From: Fimbriosthenelais zetlandica
Lineage: Eukaryota
DNA: 64,000 bases
NCBI GenBank assembly: GCA_977030845.1
Contig: OZ365110.1
Coordinates: 10,540,001 to 10,604,000, forward strand
Direction of reading: 5' to 3'
Shown here: piece after piece, positions 9,412 through 53,016 of the stretch
Position numbering within the stretch: the stretch's first letter is position 1
How the letters are laid out: each line of letters starts with the position of its first letter
Program-made: the position numbers and the translations under genes
Notes under the pieces: generated by a model
The model's database searches: none
Told to the model about the DNA's origin: nothing
What the model saw: the letters and a program-made list of their open reading frames with translations, nothing else

Positions 9412-9471
9412 TGTTATGTTGCTGGAGGTAGATATGTGCATTTAACCACCAAGAGCGTACTGGCTACTTTT

Positions 9472-9783
9472 AAATGAGCGTTTGTAAATCGTGAGAGAAA
9501 ATGAGCGTTTGTAAATCGGGTGAGAAGATGAGCGTTTGTAAATCGGGAGAGAAAATGAGCGTTTGTAAATCTGGAGAGAAAATGAGCGTTTGTAAATCGG
9601 GAGAGAAAATGAGCATTTGTAAATCGGGTGAGACAATGAGCGTTTGTAAATCGGGTGAGAAGATGAACGTTTGTAAATCGGGTGAGAAGATGAACGTTTG
9701 TAAATCGGGTGAGAAGATGAACGTTTGTAAATCGGGTGAGAAGATGAACGTTTGTAAATCGGGTGAGAAGATGAACGTTTGTA
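9472..9783. repeat. 27-bp minisatellite, ~11.5 copies
   Basis: Unit GAGAAGATGAACGTTTGTAAATCGGGT. Early units carry ATGAGC and late units ATGAAC. It explains the repeat ORFs 9442..9849 and 9501..9914. Confidence 0.95.
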
Positions 9784-10086
9784 CAGCGCGTGCTTTGGGC
9801 TTAGATCAGGAGAGACAATCAAACTCCTATCTGTTTTCATGTGATCCAATGATTACCCAAGGTTTTCAAGTTTCAGGAACAAACCTTAGTATAGTGTTTA
9901 TCTGCAGTATGTAGTAGTAAGGTATCTAGGGGGGATCCTAGGGGAGGGTGGACCCCCTGCGCACCCCCCCCCCCCCCCAACCACACTCCACCCTCTAAAT
10001 CCACGCCGCCTATCTAAGTATAATATCTAGTCTCGTACATGTATTAAGATACAAGTAGACAATAGACCTGGTAACAAATAACAGGG

Positions 10087-10413: not shown

Positions 10414-13400
10414 CTGGTAAGGGTTTGGTCTTTGGTCTTTCTACAGGCATCTCCCTCCATGTGTCTTGGTCTTCATGCCCTCTTGATAACCAGTGTGCAC
10501 ATTTGAAGATGTATGTTTCATTAGCGTTGACATCCCGGAGTTTAACCTGTTGATATTAAAAGTCGCATTAGGAAATCACTGTGACAGTCAATTTGGAGCA
10601 GTGGAATCGATAAAACTGTTTTGTAGCAATGGAATGTACGAATCAATTATATTCTCAGAAGAAGAAAAAATTCAACATCAACCACTGGCTCATGTATCAC
10701 GTATATTAAGACCTTTTGTTTTATGCATCTTTCTTTGTCAATAAAAGTTTTTAAAAATCATAAATTGATTTCTTAGTCTTTCCTCGCGGCTTATATTCCG
10801 GCAAATACGGTATTATCGCATTCATTATTATAGAAAGTCGGGTGCGCATTTTCATACATTTCGCGAGGTCTTTTAGCTGGAACTTGTGACAAATTTTTGA
10901 AAATTAGTCACAACATGGCACAACACAACAAAGGCTGCAATTTTCCATGAAAGATTACTTAAAAATAACACAGCAACGTCTTCCTTTTGCATGCCATGCA
11001 GTATCAATTTACTTTCCGTTGTAAAATCAAAAAGTTACGTACCTCTTCCAGGAACCAGCCTTGTTTGACGTCGGGATTGTCATGACCAATCCTGATTTTA
11101 TACAATTTTCCAATATCCTTTTCATAATTGATCTTAAACTCGTCCAATTGACCAGCCCTGAAAGGTTCCTTACCACTGACCGGCTGATCTAATAGTATGG
11201 GTCTGGTGTGGTCTTTATCACCATAGGCTATTAATACAATGTCAGCCTTACTTCCCATGTCCTTCTTATCACCAGTCTTAATCCATGCTCTCCATTCATG
11301 TGCTGAAGAGTAAAAAAGACTATCAGAAACATAAAGTCGTCACCAAAATTGATTATTTGAAAAACATTTGGGATATCAGAGAGATAGGGGGAGACCTAAG
11401 GGGAGAGGAGAGATAGAGCAAGCAAGAGACTGAGAGGTCAGGGGGACGGTCAGAAGAGAGAAAGAGAAAGTGAGTGATAGAGAGGGAGGAAGAGGGAGGG
11501 AGGAAATATCACAGAGCTGCCGACAAATTTAATCTAATGTACAAAACCTGGAACACACTAATCCGATTCTCTATCCGGCGCCATCTAATAGCTGTCCGAA
11601 ACTATATTTCTATTCAAACGAAATGCTTGTATTAGAGTTGTTCCCTACTCCCAACAGTTGGACGTCCTGAAATGAAGAGGCAAAGCCAAGAAGGGTCTTT
11701 ACTATATCAGGCTCATAACCAAACAATCTCTTTTAATTGGACACGTCAAAAATAAACTAAACCAGCCTGCCTGCAGGAACAGCAGGGCTGCATGCATGGT
11801 GTCGGTTAGGCCAGAATAAATCGTTCTTTTTTATACTGGCTAGTTATTGTTTAATTTATAGGAAATTACTAAGACAAAAAAACAGATTTACCCACATGGA
11901 AGAGTGCTCAATAAAACTGACTATTTGCGTTACGGTAGATAGGTCTTTTTTTGCAGTACTAACTTAGATTCATTGGATGATTGATTCTGGTGAAATTAGT
12001 TTATGCAGCCTTATCCAAATACAATTGGGAATCCTCATTTACATACCCAAATACAATTGGGAATCCTCATTTACATACGACAGTAGCAAGCAGTGCATGG
12101 GCGTCTACAGTGGGAAATACTGTTGTCCTACAGTTGGATCCTACAGTAGCTACAGGCTAGGCTTCAAGTCAACATGAGGGACAGGGTAAGAGGAACGATA
12201 ACAGATCAGGATGTAACAGCCTACATGGAAGCAAACCTCTATGGCAATGATTGGAGTTTTTAACAGCCGTCATGAGAATCTGACCTTTTTCGAGGACTTC
12301 CCACAGGATTACCCGGCCAAAGTACCCATTAAAAACCAGGAGAGCATATCTTAAAATTTGTTTACAAACCAATTATAAAATTTTCTACATGTAGAATGAC
12401 ACAATCTCTTCATTGGATATATACCCTTTTTTACCTTTAAGTTTTCAAGGAGGAAAATGTGGAAAAGTAACAATTCTCCTTGAAATAATATTGAGGATTA
12501 GCCTACCTAACCACTCCAGTCCATTGCTCCCCGGACGGATTAAAGAATCGGGTTAGTGTATTCGAGGCTTTAGACTAAGAAAGACAAAGAGTCAAAGAGA
12601 AAGACAGAGTGATGGAGAGGGAGGAAGTGTCAGAGAAGAAATATCACAATGACATAACTGCCTAAAAATTTAATCTAATGTATAAAGGGGAATAAATTAC
12701 AGTAATTTCTATGCATTTTAACATTTTCTCGGCTCACATATGGTTATTGCATCTTGGTAAAACTAATATCACTTACGTTGAGGCTTTTCCTCTTCTTGTA
12801 CTGGCACTTGTGGTATAGCAATGGGACGATAACCTGAATTATTTAAATGATCAACTATGAATTAGTTATGTTGCATTCTACATGATTTATAATAATATTA
12901 TACGAGTTATATAATCTACAATGTTATTGGGTGCTTTCCAAAATTTAGAATTCATTAATAAATAAGTGTCATAACTGGTTAGAAAGGTTATAGTTTGTAT
13001 GATATTATTTTCAAATTATTATTCAGAGTAAAGACATTTCTGGTTGGTGCAATAAAATGAGAGGAAGCATGAATGTCACACATAGAAAAATTCATTTCTA
13101 GAAAAGAAATTCTATAATATAGAAAATACAACTATTCATCATCAATAACGTCAAAACATCAAAGAATGGAAAATCTCAGAAAATGGAGAAGCTGAAACAG
13201 AATATTATCATTTCTAATCATGTGATTGATCTGCAAAAACTGCATATATTGACTTCGGGAATAGTTCATCTGTATAATTTATCAGTTGAACATGAATATT
13301 TAGGAGACTGGAACAAAATATCGCGCTGCTGTAAAATTATAGGTAAGTGTAAGCCTACATGCATGCACATAATTGAGTTGAGGATAAATAATATTAGTCA

Positions 13401-16400
13401 TTAGTCATGAAAATGTCCCCTCTCTGAAAAACCACAGTTAAAATAATTATGAACAGAATATCCATCAGAATACAGCCTATGTGTACATTGTAGTAAAAAC
13501 AATATATATTGTCGATGGTTCTTTCTTGAAATCCTCAAAAAGGTAATTTACAGATCAACATTTTTTATCAAATCCTCAAATGGAGAAAAGGTATTTTGTC
13601 AATAAAGTGATTTCCAATATTTTCGCCGAATGTCGATGCCTCCCTAAATACATTTTTGCTGAAATCCTTAATGGCCCGTGTCCACGAGGCGACAAAATAC
13701 ACATTTTTTGTAGCTGAGCCCCAAAAATGCTGTCGCTGGCTTTTGTAGCTGTATGAAAAAGACACAAATTATTGATGAACAAAATGATTACTAATAGAAA
13801 GTCGCTACGTGAGCCTGATTTCTCAGCGAATTAGTGCTTAATTAGGTCGGCGCCAATGTTAGGGTCATCAAAAGTTAATTAGGTCATGTCGCTGACAATT
13901 TTGTCGCCTCGTGGACACGGGCCATAAGAAGGGAAAGGGTCGATATAGAGCTACATGTATATTTCTTTCTTGAATTCCTCTTTCACTGGATCATAATATG
14001 AAGATGCCTCTGTAAAAAATTATGATCAAAAAACCATTACGGTATACAGTATGGATCAGAATAAAAAGTGCCACCTCTAAGAAATTCAATAATAAAATCC
14101 CTTTTTCAGACCACTCAGAGATAATATGTTTGGATCAGATTAAAGCCACAATGAAAATAATGAAGACATCCCAAATATTGGTATGGGGAAAAAAGTTTGA
14201 AAAGGGAACTGAAAAATAAAACTCACCAATATACGGTAATTTGTCATTCACTTTCACCCAACCTATGTTCCACACCAAGGAAAATTATATTCAGATTAAC
14301 AGTCTTTAGAATCTATGTAAAAAAAGATGCGCTGCATCAGTTTGAAGATAAATGATTCAAATATTCTTGCAAATACACGCGGTATACTCCCTTCCTAAAT
14401 GGACTAAAACACTCACCAAAACTTAACATGGTTGTTAATTCCCTGGCGACTTTGATCCATCCTATCACAAAATCAATGATTTATTAGCATCTGTATCACT
14501 ATCAGTCTTCAATATTTCAACCAAAATAAATAATTCGGACTTTTAAGTGATATACTTTGGAAGATAAATGAATCAACCCTCACCAACCCATTAGAGATTA
14601 ATTTGGAATGGAATCGGATGTTCGGCACTTGCCATTATAATCCCTTTCTAAATGGACTAGAACACTCACCAAAATTTAACATGGTTGGTAATTCCCTGGC
14701 AACTTTGTTCCATCCTATCACAAAATCAATGATTAATTAGGATCTGTATCAGTCTTCAATATTTCAACCAAAATAAATAATTCGAACTTTTAAGTGATAT
14801 ACTTTGGAAGATAAATGAATCAACCCTCACCAACCCATTAGAGATTAATTATAGGAATGGAATCGGATGTTCGGCACTTGCCATTATAATCCCTTTCTAA
14901 ATGGACTAGAACACTCACCAAAATTTAACATGGTTGGTAATTCCCTGGCAACTTTGTTCCATCCTATCACAAATTCAATGATAACTTATTAAATAGCAAC
15001 CAAATTAAACAATTTAAACTTGTTTTGCTTATAATTCTCTCCATTAAAATTCAAAAAGAAAAAGTTCAAGAAGTGACATCAAAATATGACTGTCACTTAC
15101 CAGCACTGTTAATGCGTGTCAAGTTGTCACCGACTTTACGCCAACCTTGACGAATAATTAAAAACATTTTTCACAAACATTTGTATGAAATAGAAACGGT
15201 TAAACTATATCTTAATGGCTCTGCAGAGAGTCGCGTATTCACTAGCGAATTCACTGGCGGATAACCATCCCGCTGGTTTTCCGCTAAGGGCCCTAGCGAA
15301 AATTGAGACTAACACCTTGCGAAAATCGTAACCATGTTCAGACTTTCAGGGCATTTAGACGCACGTAAATTTAATTGCGTCTGAAATCATTAGTGTTTGC
15401 AGAACCCTTTACAGAGCTGGAACGTTCTTGGAATGTATGTTTTCTGGAAGTTTTCTGGGATTCCAGGCTGGCATATAGAGGGAGGGCCTCAGATCATTAT
15501 TTAGGCATCAGGCATCAGTAAATATTGTGGAGGCGCTAAACTATTCCAATTTAACTTATTGCAACCACCATAGGCATACATTGCACTCACCTCCATTTTG
15601 AATTTGGGACAGATTTTCACTCAATTTGTTCCAACCTTTAAGACAAAAGCAGAATGTTGTTTCATTGGCTATTCAAAATTATTTGTCAAAATAATTAGAT
15701 ATTATTTTCTGGGGAAAAACTATTTAAAAAGTGACATTATTGCCACTTACCAGTATTGTTTATGTGAGTCAGGTTGTCACTGACTTTACGCCAACCTTTA
15801 CGCCGCAAAATAAACCAAAATAATTATTTACATAGTCATAATTATCCCTCAAAATTCTTCAAAATAAGCATGGGAACTCTCTCATATATGGATTCTTAAC
15901 CAAATTGCTAATATACCATTAATAGCAAATTAAGTAATATGCCATTCCATGGCTAGTTATAGGCACTTACCAGAGGTGCTTATATGTGGGATGTTAACGG
16001 TAACTTTATGCCAACCTTTAAAAATAACAAATAATATGATTGTGAAAATAGTAATGGCCACCCTGGATAAAAATCCAGTATGGAAGGGAATTAATTTGAA
16101 CCATAATAATTATATAATCTGTATGGGACGAAAATGAAATGTTTTTGTAACTTTTTTGTTCATTTCCTGCTAACAATTTTTGAGTGGGCGCACACAATAA
16201 TTTTTGTAGCAGATGAAATGAGAACTCACCCCTGTTCAACATATTATGCAGGTTGTCATGCACTTTGCTCCAACCTTCGATATTCAAAATTTGGGTAAAA
16301 AAGCGGAATATGTTATAAGCTTTGACACAACTCATATATTTCTTAACTAAATACGCAACAGGTAGTTGCTTCTACAATTCTCCCTTCCAACAGCTCTGCA

Positions 16401-19400
16401 CAATTCCAATTTTCATCATAATTTTAATACTTTTGATACCCAAAGATCTATACTTAAATTACATTTAAGAGATTTTATTGGATTAATTTAGGTTTTCTAG
16501 CATTTTGCGAAGAATATAATAAATTATAAACCCTATTATACTAGACAAACTATCATCATTTTATGTCAAATATATTGAAACTCACCATTTTTCGATATAG
16601 CCGATAAGTTCTCATTAGCCTTTTGCCAACCTGTTGTATATTACGTAAACACAATTATAAATTTCATGAAAAAAAAAATTCATGAAAATATCAATGAATC
16701 TTTTATAAAAACCAACCTCGAGGAGAAATACTGCATCCAAAAAAAACTATTTCAAAAAAATTGTGTAATAAAAGATCAAAAACCCAAGATTCCCCATTCA
16801 GGGGGAAAAGTCAGAGCATAGATTTCATCCAAAAGAAACTGGAGGCAGTAAGCAACAAAGATTCAGAGACACGAAAATGACGAATAAGAGAATAATGTAA
16901 AAAGTAAATGTTGACTGGAAATTTTACTGACAATCTTTGCCTTTAAAATCTTCTGAGTTGTATTTGACTGATGGTTTTCAAAATCCAAATTCCCTGATTT
17001 TCCAGTGGTAATTTCCTGCATAGTTATATTGGATATGTTTCCACTTGCAGTTGACTGAATTATTGTCCATGATTTTCGGATTCTCTTTTACGAATTTCCT
17101 GAATTTTCCAGGACTGGAAATAGAGAAAATCACGTTCCCCGATTTCCATGTATAATGATTGGAACCTTGAATGCTGGATACTTAGCATTGTCTTGCACTG
17201 TTTTTTTTTATCTTGGCAAGGAGGACAAAAGCGTTTTTCAATATTGTATAAAATATTCAATTCAATAAAATATTCACCGAAAAACATGCTCTGAAAGAAG
17301 AGGTTCACACATAAATACATGCATATAAATACCACTCAGCTCACCCTGAGAATTTATCTCAGTTAGGTTCTGACTGACCAGTTCCCATCCAGATCTTACT
17401 ACATTTGTAAATGAAATAAAACATAACTTATTTATCCAGCCTGTGATTTCTGTATCTAAATCTTGTGATTTCGATGCCGAAAAGTAATAATATCTTGCTT
17501 TGCTTGATGTCCTACTGCGGACGTTGATTTTCTAATAATTATGTTAAAATTACACATGACTGTCTATCATCTTTATCTTTGCTTATCTTCTAAACACGTT
17601 CTGCTATTAAAGCCTTATTAATCAGTAAATCTGTCCGATCTACAATATGTTTTTGAGATTCAGCATATCAGCATAGTGATATTTTAAATTTGAATCATTT
17701 CAGGGGGTTTTTCATGCAGAGTTGCTCACCTTTCATTGGATTCAGGTGAGATTTTACTGCCAGAGCTGCTCTAAGCATTTTCCAGCCCTGATTTTTTGCT
17801 ACATAAAAATAATGTGTATAATTTAATTACTATATGGTAAATAAAAACTATTGATTTCCATAGGAATTATTGTCATCTTAGACCGCTTTTCCAATTAAGT
17901 TGTATATATTCAGTCATGGAAAAATACCAATGAACTTCAAAATTTCAAAAATCTTCAGAATTATGTGTCTCACCTTTGGGTAAACTTAAAGCCTTTATGG
18001 CCTTCAAGTGGTCATTGACACTAACCCATCCATTTCCTCAAAGATAAAAGCCATTATAGATTATAATGCAAATCATATATGCATGAGATATCTTTAGGCT
18101 GAATAATTTGAATTATATTTGAGTGGGGAGTTTTTCATGCAGATTTGCTCACCTGTTATTGGCTTCAGGTGAGATTTTAGTGCCTGGGCTGCTCTAAGCA
18201 TTTTCCAGCCCTGATTTTTTGCTACATAAAACAATGAGCATGAAAGAATTTAACTACCATATGGACATAAAGAATTTCATGAGAATTATTGGTGTCTCAG
18301 ACCACTTTTTCAATTACGTTTTTATATTAAGTTAATATAGTCAGTCATGGAAAAGACCAATTTATAATTTCAATAGCCAAAAGCAATTATGGCCTTGAAG
18401 TGGTCATTCACAGTAGCCCGTCCATTTCCTCAAAGGTAAAAACCATTTAGTATATCAACAGATTTTGGCTTGTAATAAAAAAAAGTAGCCTGTGTTGAAA
18501 TAGGCAGCGTTCAATGATATGAACTAATGAATATTATTTCCTATTTTTGCAACATCAGATTGCTTTCTAGAGATAAGCAAGTCTTAATGGTTGTAACTTG
18601 TAACCATTCTCACATTTTAGTTCTCCTTGCAAAATATCTGGCAGGTGTTCAGCAACTTTCTGCCAACTATTTGGTTCTACAGAAAATGTATTCATTTAAA
18701 ATTAAGTTAATGATACTGCTATAGAGTAAATTTAAAAAAAAAAAACCTTTCTTCCCAAAAGACCCACACTAGTGAAAATACACGAAATAATATTAAAGTT
18801 TCACAGAATATACTAATTGCTATTTTGTAACCGTCCCAGATAGATATGATACCAGAAAATAAAAAGGGATTCAATTGCTGAGACATTATACATGAACACT
18901 CAGGAAATAACCAGGGAAGAACATCTAAGCCATGTAAATCTCACCAGATTTTGCATTGATGATTTCTGGCAACTTCTCATTGATCATACTCCAGCCATTC
19001 GGCTCCGACCCTGTTCACAAATTGATAATTTAGCCATGATGCACTCTATCCCCCCATTGTACAAGGAACCTCGCCAATGGCGAGAGCTTAGCGAATAAAG
19101 TAGTTTGCTCATTTTAATGCCTCTACCCATTTAAATAGTATTTTCAGCCATTGTGACAACCAACCCCTGTGACAACCAGCCCCGGCCTCCCCTACAATAT
19201 TAGGATCTAGATAAACAACAGTATGTTAATGGGGCAAAGCAAAAGTATCAAAACAGAAAGTTCACAAGGTCTGAAAATGCAAAAGATGTTAAACGGATGA
19301 AATCAAGGGCTGAGCAAGAAATAAACAAGTTGTTGTATACAGTGCTCAGCATAGAGGTCCATCCATATTCTAATTCTGTAATTAAGTGAATAAAAGTAAG

Positions 19401-22400
19401 AGCTTCTTTCTCTCCGGGCCAAGAATGTTCAACGAAAGCTAGGCACAGACATAAGGATATACATGTACAGTCGGTTCACTCTATAAGTCCGTGTCATCTA
19501 TTGCTGCTCAAATTCTGGAAAATGAAATAGACTAAAAAGTTTCAATTTGAAAGCATGCAGACATTCCATGTAGAAAAAATCTGAAATTAAAGTACACTGG
19601 GATATTTTCTTGACGCATATCAAAAGAAGTAGACAGTCAGGCTAGCTACCATATGAATGGCTGACATATAATAGTCCTGCGGTCGTTAATACAATGCATG
19701 TTAGTCGGCAGAAAAAAATACAAATCAGATCACTTACCTTCACAGTATAGAACCGTCTCAGTGATCCTTTCATCAATACCAGTGTCAAGCCACCTGAAAC
19801 AAAATTTAAAATTGCAATTTATTTGATTCAAGTCAGTGATTAACAGTATTAAAAATACTTTTAGGTCCAGTTCTTATAAAACTGCTTTCTTATAAAATCC
19901 AAGACAAAAAATTCAAAAAGTGTTTAGCCAAGGCAAATCATATACACGATAATTGTGGTAAAATTATTATTTTCCATGCGTTCTTCAAGAGATTGACTTT
20001 CCATGAGTAAAAGAATGAAGAATTTGAAGAACATTGACAGTTTTCATATTGGCCTATATATGTGACCTGTTTTCATGAAAGGAGTCTAAAGTCGCACAGG
20101 GCCATTCGGAGCTACAGGCCTGAAAGCGTTGTAAACAAACCACTTATTTCTCTTAGCATTTTCGCAATAAAAGCAAGGATGCGATATTTTTACTATTTTT
20201 GTGAGAGAAATTGAGAAAAGTTCAGCTTTGTGTGTGTTGTTCCTTCAAGATTTCTTCCAGTAGGTCTGAAATTGGCATTTTCTCTAGTTTCTGCAGTGAC
20301 TACTTTTATTCTTTGAAATTTTATAAGAAATAATGTTTCACATCTCCTTGCACTATACATTTTTGCGACTTTAGACTCATTTCGTGAAAACACGTCACAT
20401 TTCTGTAAAACTGATTTATTACCTGTTGCACATGAAGACCCACTCATGAGTGGGTTTCTGGCCAGGCTTGCTGATCTCTCTAATGATGACTTTCTCACAC
20501 AGCCAGCCCTCTCCGGGATCCAATCCATCATGGGCCACGGCGCACTTATTAATGTCTCCTAGACAAACTGCTTCTATCATGAACTCGTCACACTGTAGTG
20601 AAAAAACAAAGGTCAAAGTTAAGCGAGTTGTCTATTTCATGCCAATTTTGGAGTCAACTTGAATTATAGAAATCTTTAGGAAAACAGCGTAGAATCAAGT
20701 CTAAAGCAATGGTATTCAGAAATCAGGCAATACAAATATCGAAAGATTCATTATGTATACGTGACCATCTTTTTTGAGTGGGTAAATGATCGATAATAAC
20801 TTGAGAATTAGTCCTGGAATGCATGAATGCATGTGTATCCTAATATAATTCAAGGGTAAATAGGATCCACAAAAGTAAAGTCCTGAAATCATGAAAGAAA
20901 ATTTGAAATTTCAAAAATCGGGCAGTTGAAAGAAATTTGCCTTTGTGATAAACACATTGAAAAGATAGGAGAAAAACAGACCCCTCCACGTTCAAAGCAA
21001 TCTTTGGTGGTTGGTAGTAGGTGTCGCTTTCCCCAATCTCCCTTTTCGCCAAAAGCGATCATGTAGACATTGGCGTCCGTATCGGCACAAGGTTCATCAG
21101 CCGTATAGACCAACACCTGGTATTTCACCACTAGATAATAACAAAATAAAACAATCTTTTAATATTTTATAGGCGTTAATTAGGATATTTTTTACGAATT
21201 ATTCAACCCCTTCACAATATCTGATTCTCAACAAAAATGGACATAAATAAGGAATAATGAATACAAAAAAAATATTTTCCTTTTGATAGGGTAATACAAA
21301 CAAATGAACACGTCAGTCCATGTTTCAATACATTTTTCTTAAAAATACAAAAGGCCTATCAGATATATCTTAGAATATTTTAACAAAACATGTGGACGAT
21401 AGGCCTAATTAAACTAAATGGAATGCTAATAGAAAAACTGGAGATATATAACTTGTCTAAATTTTCAATAAAAAGAATCAATTCATTAGTGAACCAAAAC
21501 AAGTTTACGACAACGTCCGACAAATATTGATGATGGTGCCCTGTTATCTAGAATGTTTTTCTGTAGAATTGTCATGCAAGCATCAGCATATCCATAGAAC
21601 ATTAAATTTGAATCAGTTGAATACATTCAAAATTATAAGTAAAAATATAATTGCATAATGTAGGATGTTAATTAGTGTACCGAATGCATGACCAAATCAA
21701 TTTAAAGATATTAATATGTTTCTAATTTGTGAAATATATGGAGTATATACAGTTGGCGGTAGAATTTTGAAAGCATGCTTATTGGCAAAATGTTTCATTT
21801 GCTCATGATAACCACAACACAAAAGCAAAACTTTAATAGAACTAATCGATTTATGCTTTTGTTTTTGGCTTTATTAAAAACACAATTTTACGAATAAGCA
21901 TACAATTCATTTTAATGGGTTTCGGATAATGCTGCAGCCAACCGCAGAATATACTATAATAATTGATGTTAATGTTACAATGTGTTGCATGCAGAATAAT
22001 GCGTTGAATATGAAAGAAAAATCTTTGTTTTACAATGAATTACATTGTCACAACATTTAGTTGCAAACCTTTACGTCCCGCTACGACTCCTAGAAAGGGA
22101 CATAAAATATTCCAAAGAATGATTCAAATTTTAGAAATTGACAATACTTATCATCATTACAAGGAGGTGAAGCCTGGAGCACACTAATCCGATTCTCTAT
22201 CCAGCGCCGAATCGATAGGTGTCTGAAACTATATTTCTATTCACACCAAATGCTTGTAATTTGAACTGACATTTACACCTAGCTAAAGCTAACCACTGAA
22301 ATTGAAAACATTCCGATCATTATAGATGCCATTAGAAATGGGGATCGGCCGGCTACGGATAGGAGAATCGGATTAGTGTGTTCCAGGCTTAAGTAGTGAA

Positions 22401-25400
22401 ACATTTAACAGAATTTTAACAAAATTATCCCTGAAAAGATTATTAATATTAGAATCATAAATGCATCATGCAAAATGGAGTTACCATATTTGCGGGTGTA
22501 TAAAACGTGCATTTTTCGTATTTTGCCTTATAAAACAGTCCGTGTTATATCAGCAGGAGAGAATGTAATTTGGCTATAGACATCAGTAAATTGACCAAAA
22601 GGTGTACATAAGTATTTTAAAACACAGGTCTGCACTTTACAATCACATGCATATTACATGTATGTAATACATGGATTGTTTTAGGATTTTAAATTTTCGC
22701 TGCTACACTTAATACCACAGCAAATATGGTAAATAAAATATTTTACAAATTAAGAAAAGTACAATTTTTTATAAAGAATAGTTTACCTGGTGGAATAGAC
22801 TCTTTTGGTTTTATGGCTGGCAGTTCTCTTATCAGATCTCCATCATCCTTATCTCTTGCAAGCCAGCGGTTGAAGATAAACCTATAGGTTTCTTTGGTCG
22901 TCATGTTTTTAGCTCGAATCTGGAACGGAACTCAGCTTTATTTATAATATAATAGGCAGAAATGCAAATATACATCGGAAATTATGCCCGTAGCTAGGAT
23001 TTTTCATGGGGGGCGGGTGCATATAATTTCCCAAACAAGCTGGGGATCAGGAATGGGTTTCCGTGAAGTGGGCTCAGAGGCGGGAGATGCTGCAACCTGT
23101 CACAGATGGTTTGCAGATCTGTCACCGATGTATTGCTGATCTGTCACAGATGTGTTGCTGATCTGTCACAGATGTGTTGCTGATCTGTCACAGATGTGTT
23201 GCTGGTCTGTCACAGATGTGTTGCTGATCTGTCACAGATGTATTGCTGATCTGTTACCGATTTGCTGCTGATCTGTCACAGTAAATAGAGGGAAAAGGGG
23301 GGGGGGGGGTAGGAGAGTGCCAGGGAAGGAATGAGAGGAGGGGCAGAGAGAAGGGATATGGGGACAGGGATGCAGAGCAAAATAATAGGGTTGCAGAGCA
23401 GAGAGTAGAAATATGGAAGGTGGCAGAGAGGGGAGAATTTGCTGTTGAATTCAACACTTTTAACTTGCTCCAGGATCTTGTACAATCAATGAGTCAATGG
23501 TCAATGGTGTCATCATCAGTAACTGTACCCTTTACAACCAGCACCCACCACATATTCCTAGACTCACACTTTTCTTGGTCCTTGCACCTTGTATATTGCA
23601 TAAACGGTTGAGCAATGAATGTTTACTTACATCTTTTACTTTCCAGGATGGTTCCATTTCCTTGCATGTAGGCCGTAACTCAAGTCTCATTTTATATAAT
23701 TTACCTATAGTGCGAAGATTGACCTGAAAGGAAAGGGCGATTAATGTGAAAACATCAATTGTTATGGAATAACGGGACACCCTTATACACAGTGGTCTAT
23801 AACAGGGTTCCCAGCAGTTGATGAAAACAAAATTTCCTGAGTTTTCCCTGATTTATTCCCTGACTAAGCCCTTGTATTCCATCAGATATTTTAGTCATAT
23901 GAAGAATTCTGAAATTCAGTGACGGGCATGAAATTCCCTGAGTTTTCCCTGTCTGGAAAAAGTGAAGCTCATTTTCCAGAGTTTCCCTGATATAGTACAG
24001 AGTCACTGGGGACCCTGTATAATAATTTAACATAATTTTGTCCATTTTAGGGGACATTTTATTACCATATGTGACGTCTTTTCACTAAAATTGGGTCTTA
24101 AGTAGCAAAAAGTGGATTTTATGTTTCTTACAGATTCGTATAGAGCAGATCACGAGCGTTCCAATGAATTCATTTAGTGAAAACACATCATATATCTGAA
24201 CGAAAATGGAATGAACAATAAGAAATCATATATTCATGGTATACATACCTTAAATTGGTCTTGGTTTCCACTGGTGAACATATCATTATCGCCGGCTGTG
24301 CCGAGGATGATGGGGCCGGAACTACCAGCATCACCGTAGGCAGCAAGAACAACATCAGCGTTCTCTGCTCTCTCGAGTGTGTTGATCCATACCTTCCAGT
24401 CACCATCTATTTGTACAGTAAAACAAAACACATTCAATTATGGACTTGGAGACCAGAACCAATTCACTTTCTATAATTGCAATCAATTGACCCTACTCAT
24501 GACAAATTATTTTTTGAAATTTTGCCAGTGGGTACCTGTGGGCCTATATTGACTCCATGGCAGAGTTTCTTTACAAATAAAACTAGTCCTAACATGTCTG
24601 ACAGATAGGTATTTGGTGAACTGATCTGAAGACCTGATGCATCAGCCTCTACAAATTGTCAGATGAGGACCTTGGATTCCCATATTTACACCAGTAATGT
24701 CTTTGCAGTTGCGCTCATGGCACAAGGCAGGCAAATTTGTATAACAACTCTCCGGATTTTGGCCGGAGGCTCTGGCTTTTTGGGGTCTAAAAATGCCTGT
24801 CTCCGGCTTCCGGCCTATGGGCAGCCAAAGTCCATTTTTCCCCGTTTTTTTTAGACTAAAAACATTTAGGCTTAAGAGACCCGTGTTCAGTTGGCATTTC
24901 CATTGTTTCTGGTGGTGTCCAAATTAAAGCAAAATATAATATTATGTTGATATAATGGTTACACAAAGTTTACAGTTCTATTGAAAAGCAATAGACTGAG
25001 TCAGAAGTATCAAAAAGTAAGCAAAGAATCTATGGATCAAAATGGACAAAATTATAATGGAAATTTGCATGTGGCGGCATGGATAGACTCCGGGATTTTC
25101 AAAAAGCCCAAAATGCCAGAAAGAAAGAAAGCTGGAACACGCTAGACCTTTAAACGTTCCCATCGATTCTTAATCATGTACATGTAATTCAAAAAATATG
25201 AAAAACTCTTAATTGAAATAGAATAACAGTCTAAAGCAATGGCATAGGATATGGTCTCACAAAATTGAACAATTAACTTGAGTACATGGTACATGTACAC
25301 CAAAATGTGGACATTTTTACAACTTATAATGACAACCCGACCCACACTTATTTATATATAAATGTACATTCTCACGTGCAGAACAATACAAAATATTTTA

Positions 25401-37400: not shown

Positions 37401-40400
37401 ATAGACAAATGGAACGAAACAGTCGTGCATTTGAACTGATGGCACAAGCCGCAAAATGAAATAGTCCAAATTGTTTATCCATATATCATAAAAAATTGCA
37501 AACATGAAATGAGGATAAGAGAACATTTATATTATTTACCTCATCACAGAGCCAGGGTGGGTCGTCTCCACTGTTGTCATGGGAGACGCGGACCTTGTAT
37601 ATGTCGCCGATGTTCCCAACGTTTATCTAAAAAGAGACAAAAAAAGATCTAGATCGAAATTTCTTCCAGTCTCAATGGCTGTTGTATAGGGTGTTGTACA
37701 ACCATAGCCTAAAACATTGATGTACAACAATAGTCTAAAGCATTGTTGTACAACCTTAGCCAGAATAATGCAATAATAAGCAATAGTCTAACTATTTCAT
37801 AAAAGTACTTTTTCATAAAAAACAGTACTTGAACAAAAACGCTCGACGAGGTGGCCCTTGCCGACCCTCGCCATTGGCGAGGGATCGGCGAGGGTGCCCT
37901 CGCCGAGGGATTGCATTGTTGAAGTCCTGCTTTTTTGAAAAAATTGCTTCGACAACTGCTTGTTATTGCATTGTCCAAGCACTGTATTGTCAAAAACATG
38001 GCTTGGTCAATGCAATCGCTCCGCGAGGGTACCCTCGCCGATCCCTCGCCATCGACGATTTTCTTGTACAACAGGGGGTATGAGTCATAATTATGAGAAA
38101 CCAATCGTTCCAACAGAAACAATAATATTTACTCCTGAGATTGTACAAATCGAGAGATGATCAGACTTCTTAATTCACTTCCTGATTACTCAAAAAACCG
38201 CCTGGTGAAGACCACCCACGAAATTAAATTCAGGCAAATAAAGAATTCTTCCATTTATTTTTAGCTGCTACCTTTTCAAATAAAATCGATTAAATCTAAA
38301 TTGCCACTACAGCCAAAGCAGTCGGGAGAGTGAAATAGAGAGAGTTTGTATCTTTGTTGCTAGTCTGCAATATACTCTGAGGCAAACAGATAAAAGCAGA
38401 AACAAGGTACAGAGAAGATTATAGGTAGAATTCTGTTAGTTTTCCTATAGAGACGCACAAACATTGAAGACCGTCAAGGTGCTGAATTTTTAATAGCTGT
38501 CTTTTTAACATTGGCTTTTCAACATGCTTCATCTCGCCGATAATGATAGTTCTGAATGATTGAGGTTCATCAATCAGCTATTAAAAAAATATGGGTGTGT
38601 TCCATCTGAGTTATTTTCTATAGACTTTCTTATGTTTGCCCTCATTGTATGTCAAACATTTAATACTCCGTTGTGTATTAATCTATATTTCATATTTATT
38701 TCATCTGTCACTTAGGCCTACAATGAGCTAAGATGTTTCCGAATAATATAGTAGGCCTACAGTAACTATCATAATCATTTTCCAGAATAACAAACAGTTC
38801 CATTTGTGTATTAGCATCTCCACATGTAGTTGAAATCGGCTTATCTTTTCAATGAATAATGGCATCCGAAACACCACATAATTAAATTGAGAAAAATGAC
38901 TGGAAATGTCTGAATTCAGTCGACTTGACAACTTAATTGTATCCCTCAATATTTTTTTAATTTATGAAGTTAATGTCCACATTGTTCTATCCCTCTAAAG
39001 GTTATGTACAGTTGGAAGTTAGTTTTGTCAACCCCTATCAAAATTTAAGGTTATCAGCGGTGAAATGTCAGATTTTGACATATTAAAATATTACAGATGA
39101 GTAAATAGAAAACGGAATGAAATATTATTACCAACTTAGTCTGATATGTTTACAATTCTTAAGTGCCTTTAGCCTCATTCATCTTGTTCCCACACTATAG
39201 GCTCTCATAGTGCTCAGAAAATCAATGAATCAATGGTTAGAGGTTCCCGATGGACGTATATATGTTCATTAAATAATGCACGGGACAGGTATCTCTAACA
39301 AATCATGAGGAGTGAAATACTTAGATACTCTATTTATCCTCCTGGTTGAACCAGGGTTTACATCAAAGCCTGATGGGTTCAAGGGGTGGATATAGTCAAT
39401 GATGGGTTTTACACTTGACCAAACAAAACGTTTAGTATAGATGTCCAATATGTAATACACATCTGTAGGATATGTCGTCATAGCTCGAATTCATTAACTC
39501 AAGGATGCCTATTATACAGGTTGGCAATGAAACCCACAGATTTTTTTCGTTATGCAATAAACACATGATTGTTTGAACAGAGGTGTACATTGACCAGTGA
39601 CGTCACCTTTGTCGAATTAGTGTCGGAAGCAAAATCGCAGCAATGGAGCATAGGATTAACGGTCGGACCCGACTGCTGTGTTAATAAATAGATTGATAAA
39701 ATAAAGAATGGAATTGGAAGTGGATGGTTGGATAGATTGATGCATAAAGATTATAATATATAGATGAAAGGGTTGATATATCATAAGTGAATGGAATGAA
39801 TGTATGAATGACATGATTTAATTAATGTATGAATCGATTAATGAAGCAATCGATGAATGAATGAATGAATGAATCGATCAATCGATTAATGAAATGAATT
39901 AATAAGGCAATGAATGAATGAATGAATGAATGAATAAATCGAGTTCAATCAATCAATCAATCAATTAATCGGTGAATCATATAAATAAATCATGGATGTA
40001 GAGGGGAGATCAAAACTGATAGCCAGTTGACACAGATCGACCTAATAATTGTGGGACTGCGACAGACTGGTAAACAAAAAGCGACATTCTATCAAGCGAT
40101 TCTATCAAAATTATATCTCTTAACGAAACGATAGCTATGGATCGGGGGAAATATGGCGGAGTCCAGCAGATAAACATCTTCGCTTCAAATTTCAGCTTAA
40201 GTGGATAACCATTGAATGCAATAATAGGATGGGAATGGCAGAGACAGCAAATGGGAAGAAGGTGATGAAAACATCAAGACTTACATCAAATTTAAATGGA
40301 TCAAGACTTACATCAAATTTAAATGGATCAAGACTTACATCAAATTCATCTGTGTTGCCAGGAGCAAAGGCTCCATCCTCACAGAGTGGGATGACGGGTG

Positions 40401-48129: not shown

Positions 48130-48376
48130 TGGCCCGTGTCCACGAGGCGACAAAATACACATTTTTTGTAGCTGAGCGCCAAAAATGCTGGCTTTTGTAG
48201 CTGTATGAAAAAGACACAAATTATTGATGAACAAAATGATTACTAATAGAAAGTCGCTACGTGAGCCTGATTTCTCAGCGAATTAGTGCTTAATTAGGTC
48301 GGCGCCAATGTTAGGGTCATCAAAAGTTAATTAGGTCATGTCGCTGACAATTTTGTCGCCTCGTGAACACGGGCCA
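48130..48376. mobile_element. PIF/Harbinger-type MITE (copy 2 of 13672-13924)
   Basis: Same TIRs, TTA on both sides. Differs from copy 1 mainly by a 6-bp deletion and a few substitutions. Confidence 0.9.
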
Positions 48377-51109: not shown

Positions 51110-53016
51110 ATGAACAGTACAAGTAATGGTAGTAACGTTGGGGACACTGAGCTATCCGTGGCTGATATGGTCATTGAATCGTGTGTATTATCTACCATTA
51201 TTCTGGTGGCTTTATTAGGTAATGGTTTGATCCTTTCCTATAACATCCTCACCAAGAGAAGAAACTTGTTGAACCCAATTGACATCCTCATACTCAATTC
51301 AGCCCTGGCCGATTTTATCGCCACTCTAAGCGTATACCCTGCTCAGGTAAGATTTATTCAATAATAGGTTTGAAGATTGTGAGTATACAGTCATGGACAT
51401 GTATCATTAAGTTAACATCAGTAAAGCCTGGAGCACACTAATCCGATTCTCCATCCAGTTCGATCCGATAGCTGTCCCAAACTATATTTCTATTCACGCC
51501 AAATGCTTGTGATTTGAAAAGACCATTACACTCATGTTAGGCGAACCATTGACGAAATATCAATCATTGGATATCAATAGAAATGGGGATTAGTGTGTTC
51601 TAGGCTTAAGTCTGCACATAGTGATGTTAAGGACATAACCGTTTCATTTTAATATAGATGTATGGGGTACTGATGCAGTCGTGGAAGTTGGGTGAGTTGA
51701 GCTGTCGAATTGTCTACATGATTGGATTTGAGAGCATCGCCACTTCTGTGAATTCCAATTTCTTGATCAGCATCTTTTGCTTGTACACTTGCATTCTTCG
51801 ACCTCAAGCCGTCATCCGTGTAAAACACGCGCTCTATCTGACCATCGCGTTATGGCCTTATACATTTTTTTTGGCACACCACAGTGTCCTTACTGGGCAT
51901 GTTGATATTGCATTTGATGACCAGATCATGTATCTTTGCTGGGCCGGTCGCGACAAGAACTTTCACAGGCTTTTATTACAGTCAGTATTGCCCGTAGGTT
52001 ATATACCAATAATCCTCACTTGTGTCACCTATGTTATAATTTTTGTTAAGATAAAATCGCTGACTTTTCACATGAACCAGGGAACTAATGTGAAGTTAGC
52101 TCACTGTACTCTGGGTATTATTGTACTCTATATGATTTGTTACATGCCAAGCTTGATTCTCAAACTGTCAGGTTTGGACAGACTTTCACAAGTTTGGGTC
52201 AAAATACTTCGATATTCGCAGTATCTTCTCTATTCAAATGCTGCTTGGAATCCTCTCTACTATCTCTACAGGATGAATTATTTATTCCCTCCATGGGTGA
52301 GGAATAGTTTAACGAGAAATGTGGTATCGGTGGCTTATGGAACAAATGAAGCGCTTGGTGTGAATAGCCAGCCAGGAGGCAGCAGGTCTGTAACAGGGGA
52401 AGGGGTAGAGGGCATGGGTGTGACAGGTATCTCATGTATGACATGTAGACCTACTCTGACAGGTATTTCAGGTATGATAGGTAGACCTGCTCTGACAGGT
52501 ATTTCAGGTATGACAGGTAGATCTGCTGTGACAGGCATGTCAGGTATGACAGGTAGATCTGCTGTGACAGGCATTTCAGGTTTGACAGGTAGATCTGCTG
52601 TGACAGGCATTTCAGGTTTGACAGGTAGATCTGCTGTGACAGGAATCTCAGGTGTAACAGGTAGATCTGCTGTAACATGCATCTCGGGTATGTCACATAC
52701 ACCGGCTGTGACAGGCATCTCAGTTATGACAGGTAGACCGGCTGTGACAGGAATATCAGGTATGACAGGTAGACCTGCTGTGACAGGCATCTCAGGTATG
52801 GCAGGTAGATCTGATGTGACAGGCATCTCAGGTATGGCAGGTATAACTGATGTGACAGGTATCTCTAGTACTAGTGGTAGACCTCATGTGACAGGTATCT
52901 CAGATACGACAGGGATCTCGGTTTTGACAGGTAAGCCAGATGTACCTGGTGCAATTGGTGTTAAGGCAGGCGTGCAGCATATAATGGTCAAAGAATTAAT
53001 AAAGTCGGATGAATAG
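51110..53016 (+). CDS. Class A (rhodopsin-like) orphan GPCR, 2 coding exons, 531 aa, long repetitive C-tail
   Basis: Exons 51110-51346 (|GTAAG) and 51658-53016 (TATAG|), phase 0. N-terminal NST/NGS sequons; TM1 LLGNGLIL, TM2 NSALADF, TM4 LWPY, TM6 ICYMP, TM7 NAAWNPLYY. No DRY motif. An upstream acceptor ending at 51069 implies a further 5' exon. Confidence 0.88.
51425..51606. mobile_element. PIF/Harbinger-type MITE in the GPCR intron
   Basis: AGCCTGGAGCACACTAATCC...GGATTAGTGTGTTCTAGGCT with TAA on both sides. Confidence 0.85.
52420..52935 (+). repeat. Coding 36-bp minisatellite (TGISGMTGRSAV, ~14 units) in the GPCR C-tail
   Basis: Visible in the DNA (GTGACAGGCATCTCAGGTATGACAGGTAGATCTGCT) and in the translation. 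Confidence 0.95.

What the first reader, a model, noticed from the sequence alone, without database searches (positions are those of the whole stretch)
14227..19010. Array of 16 symmetric micro-exons encoding a GWxKVxxxLxxI motif inside an RP1-like ciliary gene
Seen: what looks like one 7-kb intron between PLAT4 and PLAT5 contains 16 cassettes of 36-69 nt (nine are exactly 45 nt). All are phase 1-1 and stop-free, with GTRAG donors, and each carries one Trp-anchored peptide with hydrophobic residues at about positions 1-4-8-11. The peptide motif is conserved while the intronic flanks are mostly unrelated. Six cassettes use weak AAG/GAG acceptors. Inference: either a 275-aa tandem array of short amphipathic helices, or a combinatorial/mutually exclusive splicing system reminiscent of Dscam arrays or schistosome micro-exon genes. 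Binding to calmodulin/EF-hands, microtubules or membrane is speculation. None of these exons is recoverable as such from the ORF track.
Basis: partly seen in the sequence, partly recalled or inferred. Interest (0 to 1): 0.88.

Follow-up and report, generated by a model that had tools for sequence, protein, structure and literature searches.

The report
Array of sixteen repeated micro-exons
One 7-kb intron of a worm gene for a large microtubule- and membrane-binding-type protein holds 16 related mini-exons that show protein-coding constraint and could add up to 275 amino acids between two domains; this is a clear but not unprecedented case of a gene growing by copying an exon.

Summary
On the minus strand, between the last exon of PLAT domain 4 (19793-19738) and a short linker exon (12833-12777), lie 16 homologous cassettes of 36-69 nt, nine of them 45 nt. 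All are phase 1-1 and stop-free, with AG acceptors and GTRAG donors, and each encodes a G-W-x-K-V-x-x-N-L-x-x-I type peptide.

Similarity stops exactly at the splice sites. Third codon positions vary most. pN/pS is 0.54 in the claimed frame against 1.1-1.2 in the other two. That frame has 0 stops in 259 codons against 21-26. At least the older cassettes have therefore been kept as translated exons.

The host gene belongs to the bilaterian DCX + PLAT-repeat + FGF-like-trefoil family ("LOXHD1-like" or "oxygen-regulated protein 1" models). None of 421 homologues, nor the Capitella locus, has the repeat. Most orthologues checked have a short acidic linker at this site, so the array is a lineage-specific insertion.

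It grew by tandem exon duplication with birth (cassettes 13-15) and death (one decayed copy). This fits earlier scan notes of pervasive splice-junction copying in this genome.

No transcript or close-relative data could be reached, so whether the exons are constitutive, skippable or combinatorial is unresolved. No Dscam-type signal was found. Function is inferred only.

The parts
19738..19793 (-). Constitutive exon ending PLAT4 (WLDTGIDERITETVLYCE); its donor is in phase 1
   Evidence: Aligns to WLDxGxDDKKIERxLxVKE of orthologues
18945..19010 (-). Cassette 1, 66 nt, CAG acceptor, GTGAGA donor
18614..18676 (-). Cassette 2, 63 nt, TAG acceptor (SW instead of GW; ends in T)
18380..18428 (-). Decayed copy of cassette 4 (4'): Trp codon changed to Arg, a 34-nt deletion removed the 3' end and donor, and the frame runs into a stop
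   Evidence: motif score only 5.6
18153..18221 (-). Cassette 3, 69 nt, TAG acceptor; young paralogue of cassette 5
17974..18036 (-). Cassette 4, 63 nt, GAG acceptor
17730..17798 (-). Cassette 5, 69 nt, TAG acceptor
17345..17398 (-). Cassette 6, 54 nt, TAG acceptor
16586..16630 (-). Cassette 7, 45 nt, CAG acceptor
16230..16274 (-). Cassette 8, 45 nt, AAG acceptor
15971..16015 (-). Cassette 9, 45 nt, AAG acceptor
15751..15795 (-). Cassette 10, 45 nt, AAG acceptor
15591..15635 (-). Cassette 11, 45 nt, AAG acceptor
15101..15145 (-). Cassette 12, 45 nt, AAG acceptor
14919..14963 (-). Cassette 13, 45 nt, TAG acceptor
14670..14714 (-). Cassette 14, 45 nt, exon identical to cassette 13
14417..14461 (-). 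Cassette 15, 45 nt, 4 nt different from cassette 14 (3 nonsynonymous)
14383..14982 (.). 249-bp tandem duplication unit x2.4 (94% matches) that carries cassettes 13-15 with their intron flanks; the youngest growth zone
14227..14262 (-). Cassette 16, 36 nt, TAG acceptor
12777..12833 (-). Phase 1-1 linker exon (YRPIAIPQVPVQEEEKPQ); matches the short acidic linker found in most orthologues checked
11043..11302 (-). First exon of PLAT5
   Evidence: Pfam PLAT E 1.9e-12; boundaries
10414..10546 (-). Second exon of PLAT5

Best explanation
The 16 cassettes are genuine translated micro-exons of the host DCX-PLAT gene. One phase 1-1 micro-exon arose in the ancestral phase-1 intron that splits the short PLAT4-PLAT5 linker. 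It was then copied many times by local tandem duplication of exon-plus-intron units. Old copies kept their splice sites and peptide motif while their intron flanks diverged to background identity. Copying continues (cassettes 13-15, and the pair 3/5), and some copies die (4'). Each cassette ends with the first base of a Gly codon (G in 15 of 16) and most begin with the other two bases followed by the Trp codon. Any run of cassettes therefore splices in frame and in most junctions recreates Gly-Trp. In the mRNA several to all cassettes are included. This turns a roughly 20-aa acidic linker into a basic repeat region of up to 275 aa (net charge +18, rich in Asn, Lys and Leu). The region consists of about 15-residue units, each a short amphipathic helix followed by a Gly/Asn/Ser turn. 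Shown here: the anatomy, homology of all 16 cassettes, coding-type constraint, absence from homologues, and ongoing birth and death. Inferred: actual splicing and the degree of inclusion, the helical structure, and any binding role. The most likely role is a length-adjustable spacer between PLAT domains that could interact with a membrane or microtubule surface.
For: Open joint frame and correct phases. Column identity is 0.56 in the exon and 0.90 at the donor but about 0.30 in flanks, with sharp edges at the splice sites; codon positions 1/2/3 give 0.59/0.63/0.39. pS 0.74 and pN 0.40 (ratio 0.54) in the claimed frame against ratios of 1.24 and 1.12 in the control frames; 0 stops against 21-26. 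All 16 share 49-58% core nucleotide identity against 26% by chance. The motif occurs only in this intron, strand and frame. Both flanking exons are phase 1 and match orthologue sequence on either side of a short linker. Tandem 249-bp units carry cassettes 13-15, and a decayed copy lost its Trp and donor. Donors are uniformly strong, 16/16 GTRAG against about 11/17 in the rest of the gene. Introns of 115-714 nt suit intron-definition splicing. The same gene has a 100%-identical tandem copy of a donor junction at 40273-40346, so the duplication process is active here. Helical hydrophobic moment is above shuffles, mean z 1.7.
Against: There is no RNA evidence and no close relative, so splicing is not shown. 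Three protein searches plus one exhaustive search found no protein of this species or of a near relative. Acceptors are weaker than in the rest of the gene: 6/16 AAG/GAG against 0/17, and CAG 2/16 against 12/17. This argues against fully efficient constitutive inclusion. The youngest copies differ mostly by nonsynonymous changes (8 of 10), so they show no purifying selection yet and may not all be used. Pro at repeat position 10 in about 7 cassettes weakens the simple helix model. The motif profile and pairwise statistics come from paralogues that are not independent.
Confidence: 0.7

Rival explanations
1. The cassettes form a regulated alternative-splicing module. They are individually skippable (combinatorial) or chosen one at a time (mutually exclusive), giving many linker isoforms rather than one long repeat.
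For: All cassettes are symmetric phase 1-1, so any subset stays in frame, and the skip product equals the orthologue state. Acceptors are significantly weaker than in the constitutive exons of the same gene. Cassette sequences have diversified into subfamilies. Seven cassettes also carry an in-frame internal AAAG acceptor 12 nt downstream.
Against: Against strict mutual exclusion: introns are at least 115 nt, so there is no steric block. No docking/selector complementarity exceeds shuffled controls. Flanks hold no conserved element. Cassette lengths differ (36-69 nt). Cassettes 13 and 14 encode the same peptide. The array lies in a linker rather than replacing part of a fold. Simple combinatorial skipping cannot be excluded from sequence alone.
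Confidence: 0.18
2. The cassettes are non-functional by-products of this genome's habit of copying splice junctions in tandem ('mirage'-like decoys). They are rarely or never included in mature mRNA.
For: Earlier scan notes report pervasive junction copying in this genome. A perfect donor-junction triplet lies in this very gene. Cassettes 13-15 form a typical young tandem array. Young copies show no excess of synonymous change. Amphioxus mirages do not disturb normal splicing (PMC3087553).
Against: Decoys would not keep an open frame over 259 codons, a codon-position pattern, a pN/pS below 1 in one frame only, and both splice sites while the flanks decay to background identity. The one copy that lost its donor also lost its Trp and frame, as expected if the others are maintained.
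Confidence: 0.09
3. The cassettes belong to a separate small gene nested in the intron, for example a secreted micro-exon gene, rather than to the DCX-PLAT transcript.
For: Micro-exon genes with symmetric exons exist in flatworms.
Against: No ATG-initiated exon with a phase-1 GTRAG donor exists in the 727-nt intron upstream of cassette 1. The cassette phase matches both flanking host exons. The cassettes are on the same strand as the host gene and lie entirely inside one host intron.
Confidence: 0.03

Closest known systems
Tandem exon duplication arrays that extend repeat proteins (collagen 45/54-nt exons, titin PEVK, nebulin, obscurin, Drosophila dumpy)
   Same: Homologous short exons are copied in tandem with their introns. 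They have symmetric phase and are all included, giving a repeat region whose length evolves by unit gain and loss. About 10% of animal genes hold tandemly duplicated exons (Letunic et al. 2002 as cited in PMC9013439).
   Different: Here the units are micro-exons of 36-69 nt that encode a new 15-residue Trp-anchored motif. They were inserted as a lineage-specific block into the linker of an otherwise conserved multi-domain gene. Inclusion is not demonstrated.
Dscam1-type clusters of mutually exclusive exons
   Same: A tandem array of homologous exons inside one gene, generated by exon duplication.
   Different: There is no docking/selector pairing signal. Multiple inclusion is frame-compatible. 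Exon lengths differ. The array is in a linker rather than replacing part of a domain, and the orthologue state has no such exon at all.
Schistosome micro-exon genes (MEGs)
   Same: Runs of very short symmetric exons separated by much longer introns. Any subset stays in frame (bioRxiv 10.1101/2023.06.21.545858 abstract).
   Different: MEGs are small dedicated genes for secreted proteins, most of whose coding sequence is micro-exons. Here the array is an internal module of 275 aa at most in a large DCX-PLAT protein, whose full-length orthologue models are about 2,500-5,700 aa. The exons are homologous repeats of one another.
'Mirages': minisatellite-like tandem copies of exon-intron boundaries (amphioxus Adh3, globins; PMC3087553)
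   Same: The same kind of local tandem duplication centred on splice junctions. [quoted passage not shown] A true mirage lies in this gene at 40273-40346.
   Different: Mirage units are 81-100% identical, span one boundary and are not spliced. Here each unit is a whole exon with both sites, most units are old (flanks at background identity), and the exon parts show coding constraint.
DCX + PLAT-repeat + FGF-like trefoil proteins annotated 'LOXHD1-like' or 'oxygen-regulated protein 1' (e.g. Capitella CAPTEDRAFT_225952, Lineus longissimus, Owenia fusiformis, Physella XP_059163011.1)
   Same: The host gene is collinear with them exon by exon: DCX, PLAT1, PLAT2, trefoil, PLAT3, PLAT4, PLAT5. Identity is 45-60% per exon.
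   Different: None of 421 fetched homologues has the GW repeat. Their PLAT4-PLAT5 linkers are mostly short and acidic.

Membership tests
DCX-PLAT-trefoil family ('LOXHD1-like' / 'oxygen-regulated protein 1' gene models) | N-terminal doublecortin (PF03607) domain | tested here: met
   First exon 45479-44607: DCX E 1.8e-08, 34.8 bits, above the cut-off of 22
DCX-PLAT-trefoil family ('LOXHD1-like' / 'oxygen-regulated protein 1' gene models) | Several PLAT/LH2 (PF01477) domains | tested here: met
   PLAT hits on exons at 40.5, 36.7, 21.1, 20.6 and 11.3 kb. PLAT3 was identified by homology
DCX-PLAT-trefoil family ('LOXHD1-like' / 'oxygen-regulated protein 1' gene models) | FGF-like beta-trefoil (PF00167) between PLAT2 and PLAT3, with collinear domain order | tested here: met
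   Pfam found nothing on two of the three trefoil exons (29.3 and 28.4 kb); the third, at 30.3 kb, was not scanned. All three align at 45-59% to the PF00167-bearing region of homologues in the same order
RP1 / RP1L1 (true oxygen-regulated protein 1) | Two tandem DCX domains and no PLAT repeats | tested here: not met
   One DCX match only, and at least five PLAT domains. The name comes from automatic annotation of homologues
Dscam-type mutually exclusive exon cluster | Docking site and selector sequences able to pair, one selector per variant exon | tested here: not met
   Best 8-10-mer complementarity (with G-U) between the first or last intron and the inter-cassette introns does not exceed shuffles. 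This short-word test would miss imperfect long duplexes
Dscam-type mutually exclusive exon cluster | Variants are interchangeable (same length, same structural slot) and double inclusion is prevented | tested here: not met
   Lengths are 36-69 nt, all phase 1-1 so multiple inclusion stays in frame, and introns are at least 115 nt
Dscam-type mutually exclusive exon cluster | Exactly one variant per mRNA | not testable with these tools
   No transcript data for this species could be reached
Schistosome-type micro-exon gene (MEG) | Symmetric micro-exons, each a multiple of 3 | tested here: met
Schistosome-type micro-exon gene (MEG) | Small dedicated gene: most of the coding sequence is micro-exons, with a signal peptide and a secreted product | tested here: not met
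   The array lies inside a large multi-domain gene. No own first exon is present in the upstream intron
Mirage (tandem copies of an exon-intron boundary) | Minisatellite-like units of high identity (81-100%) spanning one boundary | tested here: not met
   Only cassettes 13-15 lie in a high-identity tandem array. The other flanks are at background identity, and each unit holds both splice sites. Definition taken from PMC3087553
Known protein repeat families (Pfam) | Significant match of the cassette peptide to a curated repeat model | tested here: inconclusive
   Cassettes 1-5 alone gave no hit (best E 0.13, below cut-off). The spliced 275-aa product has no reference and was not searched

The most novel reading that the evidence does not exclude
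The array is a working combinatorial module. Weak acceptors and strong donors would let the cell include variable subsets of 16 frame-compatible micro-exons. That would tune the length and charge of the PLAT4-PLAT5 spacer of a cytoskeleton-membrane linker protein. The array would also be a caught-in-the-act example of this genome's splice-junction copying ('mirage' process) creating new, selected coding sequence.
Probability: 0.2. Interest if true: 0.7.

Novelty: new variant of a known kind. Interest (0 to 1): 0.45.

Why it matters
If the cassettes are spliced as the sequence implies, this locus shows within one intron every stage of how a conserved gene gains new coding sequence by exon duplication. 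It holds old, diverged and constrained copies, copies a few mutations old, and a dead copy. It also links the pervasive tandem copying of splice junctions noted elsewhere in this genome to a productive outcome. That outcome was proposed for amphioxus 'mirages' (PMC3087553), and none of the papers read here documents a case. The array is also a practical warning for annotation: none of these 36-69-nt exons is visible to ORF-based or homology-based gene finding. The protein-level consequence, a basic 15-residue Trp-anchored repeat between two PLAT domains, is new as a motif, but its function is unknown.

Tried and rejected
1. Orthologue evidence. An exhaustive HMMER search with the PLAT5 exon and three word-indexed searches seeded with this window's own exons covered lengths of about 70-5,800 aa. 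They returned 421 homologues. None came from this species or a close relative (best per-exon identity about 66%), and none held the GW repeat. Transcript or annotation support therefore could not be obtained.

2. The first alignment used as a query (A1) was scattered by MAFFT and gave a degraded profile. Later queries (A3, A7) were built to stay compact.

3. The Owenia protein was not on record for locus retrieval. The Capitella locus was fetched and has no cassette.

4. A Dscam-like docking/selector search gave nothing above shuffles. A first version of that script timed out.

5. A search for a nested-gene first exon found none.

6. Pfam on cassettes 1-5 gave nothing.

7. Relation of the motif to other exons of the gene, such as the PLAT N-terminal (G)xW(K/R)xW strand: no exon scored above background with the motif profile, so it was rejected as the detectable source.

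8. Resemblances considered and not pursued: the bacterial choline-binding GWxK repeat, LIR (WxxV), SxIP and PxIxIT motifs. Each shares only 2-3 residues by eye, the full patterns do not fit, and none was tested.

9. Not done: structure prediction, Pfam, PDB or database searches with the spliced 275-aa product.


Full report
**Observation**

The gene lies on the minus strand. Between the exon that ends PLAT domain 4 (19793-19738, WLDTGIDERITETVLYCE) and a small linker exon (12833-12777, YRPIAIPQVPVQEEEKPQ) lies a 6.9-kb interval. Their lengths are 66, 63, 69, 63, 69, 54, nine of 45, and 36 nt.

Spliced together with the two flanking exons they give one open reading frame with a 275-aa insert. 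Acceptors are 2 CAG, 8 TAG, 5 AAG and 1 GAG. Donors are all GTRAG, and 10 are GTRAGT. Introns between cassettes are 115-714 nt.

**Is it more than chance?**

- A profile of the 15-residue core, searched over every stop-free stretch in all six frames of the 64-kb window, scores the 16 cassettes at 15.6-28.5 bits. The next best hit scores 8.7. The profile was built from the cassettes, so this shows uniqueness, not independent discovery.
- The claimed frame has 0 stops in 259 codons. The other two sense frames have 21 and 26, and the antisense frames have 8-15.
- Open phase-1-1 AG...GTRAG candidates occur at 3.3 per kb in the array against 0.41 per kb elsewhere in the window.
- All 16 cores share 49-58% nucleotide identity against 26% expected from composition, so they form one homologous family.

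**Are they coding?**

For the seven non-redundant 45-nt cassettes (7-13), column identity is 0.29-0.32 in the distal flanks (beyond 20 nt from the splice sites). It is 0.45 in the last 20 nt before the acceptor, 0.56 in the exon and 0.90 over the donor hexamer. It returns to 0.31 immediately after the donor. Identity by codon position is 0.59, 0.63 and 0.39.

Pooled Nei-Gojobori proportions over eight distinct 45-nt cassettes are pS 0.74 and pN 0.40, a ratio of 0.54 with pS near saturation. The two other frames, used as controls, give ratios of 1.24 and 1.12.

Sharp similarity edges at the splice sites, third-position wobble and frame-specific constraint are what translated exons show. Decoy splice sites, transposon fragments or RNA genes would not show them. 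I conclude that at least the older cassettes (1, 2, 6-12 and 16, and probably the ancestors of the younger ones) have been maintained as protein-coding exons. This is inference from paralogues within one genome. No RNA was available.

**The host gene**

Pfam finds a DCX domain in the first exon (45479-44607) and PLAT domains on exons at 40.5, 36.7, 21.1, 20.6 and 11.3 kb.

An exhaustive search with the PLAT5 exon and word-indexed searches place the gene in a bilaterian family with DCX, an FGF-like trefoil (PF00167) and many PLAT repeats. Automatic pipelines name these models 'lipoxygenase homology domain-containing protein 1-like' or 'oxygen-regulated protein 1'.

The window's exons are collinear with them in the order DCX, PLAT1, PLAT2, trefoil, PLAT3, PLAT4, PLAT5. 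Per-exon identity to orthologue models is mostly about 40-60%. The best matches are the annelids Capitella and Owenia, the nemerteans Lineus and Tubulanus, and Lingula. An earlier scan note calls this genome a probable annelid, and these matches fit that.

The gene is not RP1 proper. It has one DCX domain, and it has PLAT repeats.

**The array is lineage-specific**

None of 421 homologues has two or more matches to the motif, and the best profile score among them is 2.3 bits.

In most orthologues checked the sequence after WLDxGxDDKKIERxLxVKE runs straight into a short, mostly acidic linker before the PLAT5 start, GEWKxWV. The linker is about 20-60 aa in Lineus, Tubulanus, Owenia, Mytilus and Ylistrum. 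The window's exon 12833-12777 is the counterpart of that linker. The ancestral mRNA therefore joined 19738 directly to 12833, and the cassettes were added inside that phase-1 intron.

The complete Capitella locus (L001, 22.5 kb) has no cassette; its best score is 6.8 bits, which is background. The Capitella model does have a linker of about 275 aa at the same site. It is unrelated low-complexity sequence encoded by six small exons after a long first one. Either this linker is a recurrent site of exon gain or that old gene model is poor.

**How it arose**

Tandem Repeats Finder reports a 249-bp unit x2.4 at 94% identity covering cassettes 13-15.

- Cassettes 13 and 14 are identical in the exon and nearly identical in the flanks.
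- Cassette 15 differs from cassette 14 at 4 exon positions: 3 nonsynonymous and 1 synonymous.
- A two-cassette unit was duplicated to give [4', 3] and [4, 5]. Cassettes 3 and 5 differ at 6 of 69 nt (5 nonsynonymous). Copy 4' has its Trp codon changed to Arg and a 34-nt deletion that removed its 3' end and donor, and it reads into a stop.

The array therefore evolves by birth and death of exon-plus-intron units.

The same gene carries a perfect 27-nt x2.7 tandem copy of the PLAT1 exon's donor junction at 40273-40346. This is the 'mirage' type of repeat described in amphioxus (PMC3087553). Earlier notes of this scan report such repeats as pervasive in this genome. I verified only this one case.

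That paper proposed that such units could turn into real exons. The GW array looks like that outcome, with the difference that each unit already contains a whole exon. The origin of the first cassette is unknown, because no other exon of the gene resembles it.

**How it probably works**

The upstream constitutive exon and 15 of the 16 cassettes end with G. The 45-nt cassettes and cassette 16 begin with GT or GA followed by TGG. Any cassette spliced after any other therefore stays in frame, and across those junctions the Gly-Trp pair is recreated.

Donors are uniformly strong: 16/16 GTRAG against about 11 of 17 for the gene's other exons. Acceptors are weaker than in the rest of the gene: 6/16 AAG or GAG against 0/17 (p = 0.007), and CAG 2/16 against 12/17 (p = 0.001). 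When paralogue groups are collapsed, the CAG contrast gives p = 0.04. The boundaries of the other exons were read from homology and are approximate.

Short introns with strong donors favour intron-definition splicing of every unit. The weak acceptors leave room for skipping.

Strict one-of-16 choice is unlikely for several reasons:

- There is no steric constraint, because introns are at least 115 nt.
- No conserved intronic element is present.
- No docking/selector complementarity exceeds shuffles.
- Cassette lengths are unequal.
- Two cassettes encode the same peptide.

A separate nested gene is also unlikely. No ATG exon with a phase-1 donor lies upstream of cassette 1.

**The peptide**

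The consensus of the 45-nt class is G-W-x-K-V-x-x-N-L-x-x-I-x-x-x. Gly, Trp and Lys are invariant, and the hydrophobic positions are 2, 5, 9 and 12. That 3-4-3 spacing fits a short amphipathic helix closed by a polar or Gly turn. So does a helical hydrophobic moment above shuffles in most cassettes (mean z 1.7; moment higher at 100 degrees than at 170 degrees).

Pro at position 10 in about seven cassettes would end or kink the helix after two turns.

The 275-aa product is basic (37 K+R against 19 D+E) and rich in Asn, Leu, Lys and Ser. The ancestral linker is acidic.

Pfam has no match for cassettes 1-5.

A role as a length-variable, surface-binding spacer between PLAT domains is my best guess and is untested. 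Calmodulin, tubulin or membrane binding remain speculation.

**Limits**

No transcript, no close relative and no population data could be reached. The spliced product could not be submitted to structure prediction or database searches, because it has no contiguous reference. The selection statistics rest on paralogues that share ancestry. The youngest copies (8 nonsynonymous and 2 synonymous differences in all) show no purifying selection and may be too young to tell.

**Verdict**

The cassettes are most likely real, translated, tandemly duplicated micro-exons forming a lineage-specific repeat insert in a DCX-PLAT protein (confidence 0.7). Their inclusion regime is open.

This is a new variant of a known kind, tandem exon duplication. 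It is of moderate interest as a clear birth-and-death series and as a possible productive outcome of this genome's splice-junction copying.

Noticed in passing
window 40273-40346: A 27-nt unit repeated 2.7 times at 100% identity. It contains the donor junction (GAT|GTAAGT) of the first PLAT1 exon. This is a 'mirage'-type copy of a splice junction inside the same gene, giving two extra in-register decoy donors.
   Followed up: partly
window 13671-13925 and 48131-48375: A MITE-like element of about 250 bp with 28-nt perfect terminal inverted repeats (ATGGCCCGTGTCCACGAGGCGACAAAAT). One copy lies in the intron after cassette 16. A second copy lies near the small intronless gene at about 47-48 kb.
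   Followed up: partly
window, cassettes 8, 9, 10, 12, 13, 14, 15 (e.g. 15783, 15133, 14951): Each has a second in-frame acceptor-like AAAG 12 nt inside the exon. If used, it would give a 33-nt exon lacking the G-W-x-K residues. Conservation of the Trp argues that the upstream site is the main one.
   Followed up: no
L001 5882-9438 (Capitella teleta KB308242.1): The Capitella gene model also has a long PLAT4-PLAT5 linker of about 275 aa. It is unrelated low-complexity sequence encoded by small exons of 36-159 nt. The linker may be a recurrent site of exon gain, or the model may be unreliable.
   Followed up: partly
window 23097-23281: A 22-nt unit repeated 8.4 times (90% matches) within the PLAT3 part of the gene, between the exons at about 23.6 kb and 22.9 kb.
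   Followed up: no
window 9417-9911: A long tandem repeat, open in several frames in the six-frame translation (for example a repeated GEKMSVCKS peptide). It lies just downstream of the last recognised PLAT5 exon. Its nature was not examined.
   Followed up: no
window 51658-53013 (+) and 52338-52883 (-): A 452-aa intronless ORF on the plus strand overlaps, on the opposite strand, an open repeat of PVTADLPVIPE-like units. Neither was examined.
   Followed up: no
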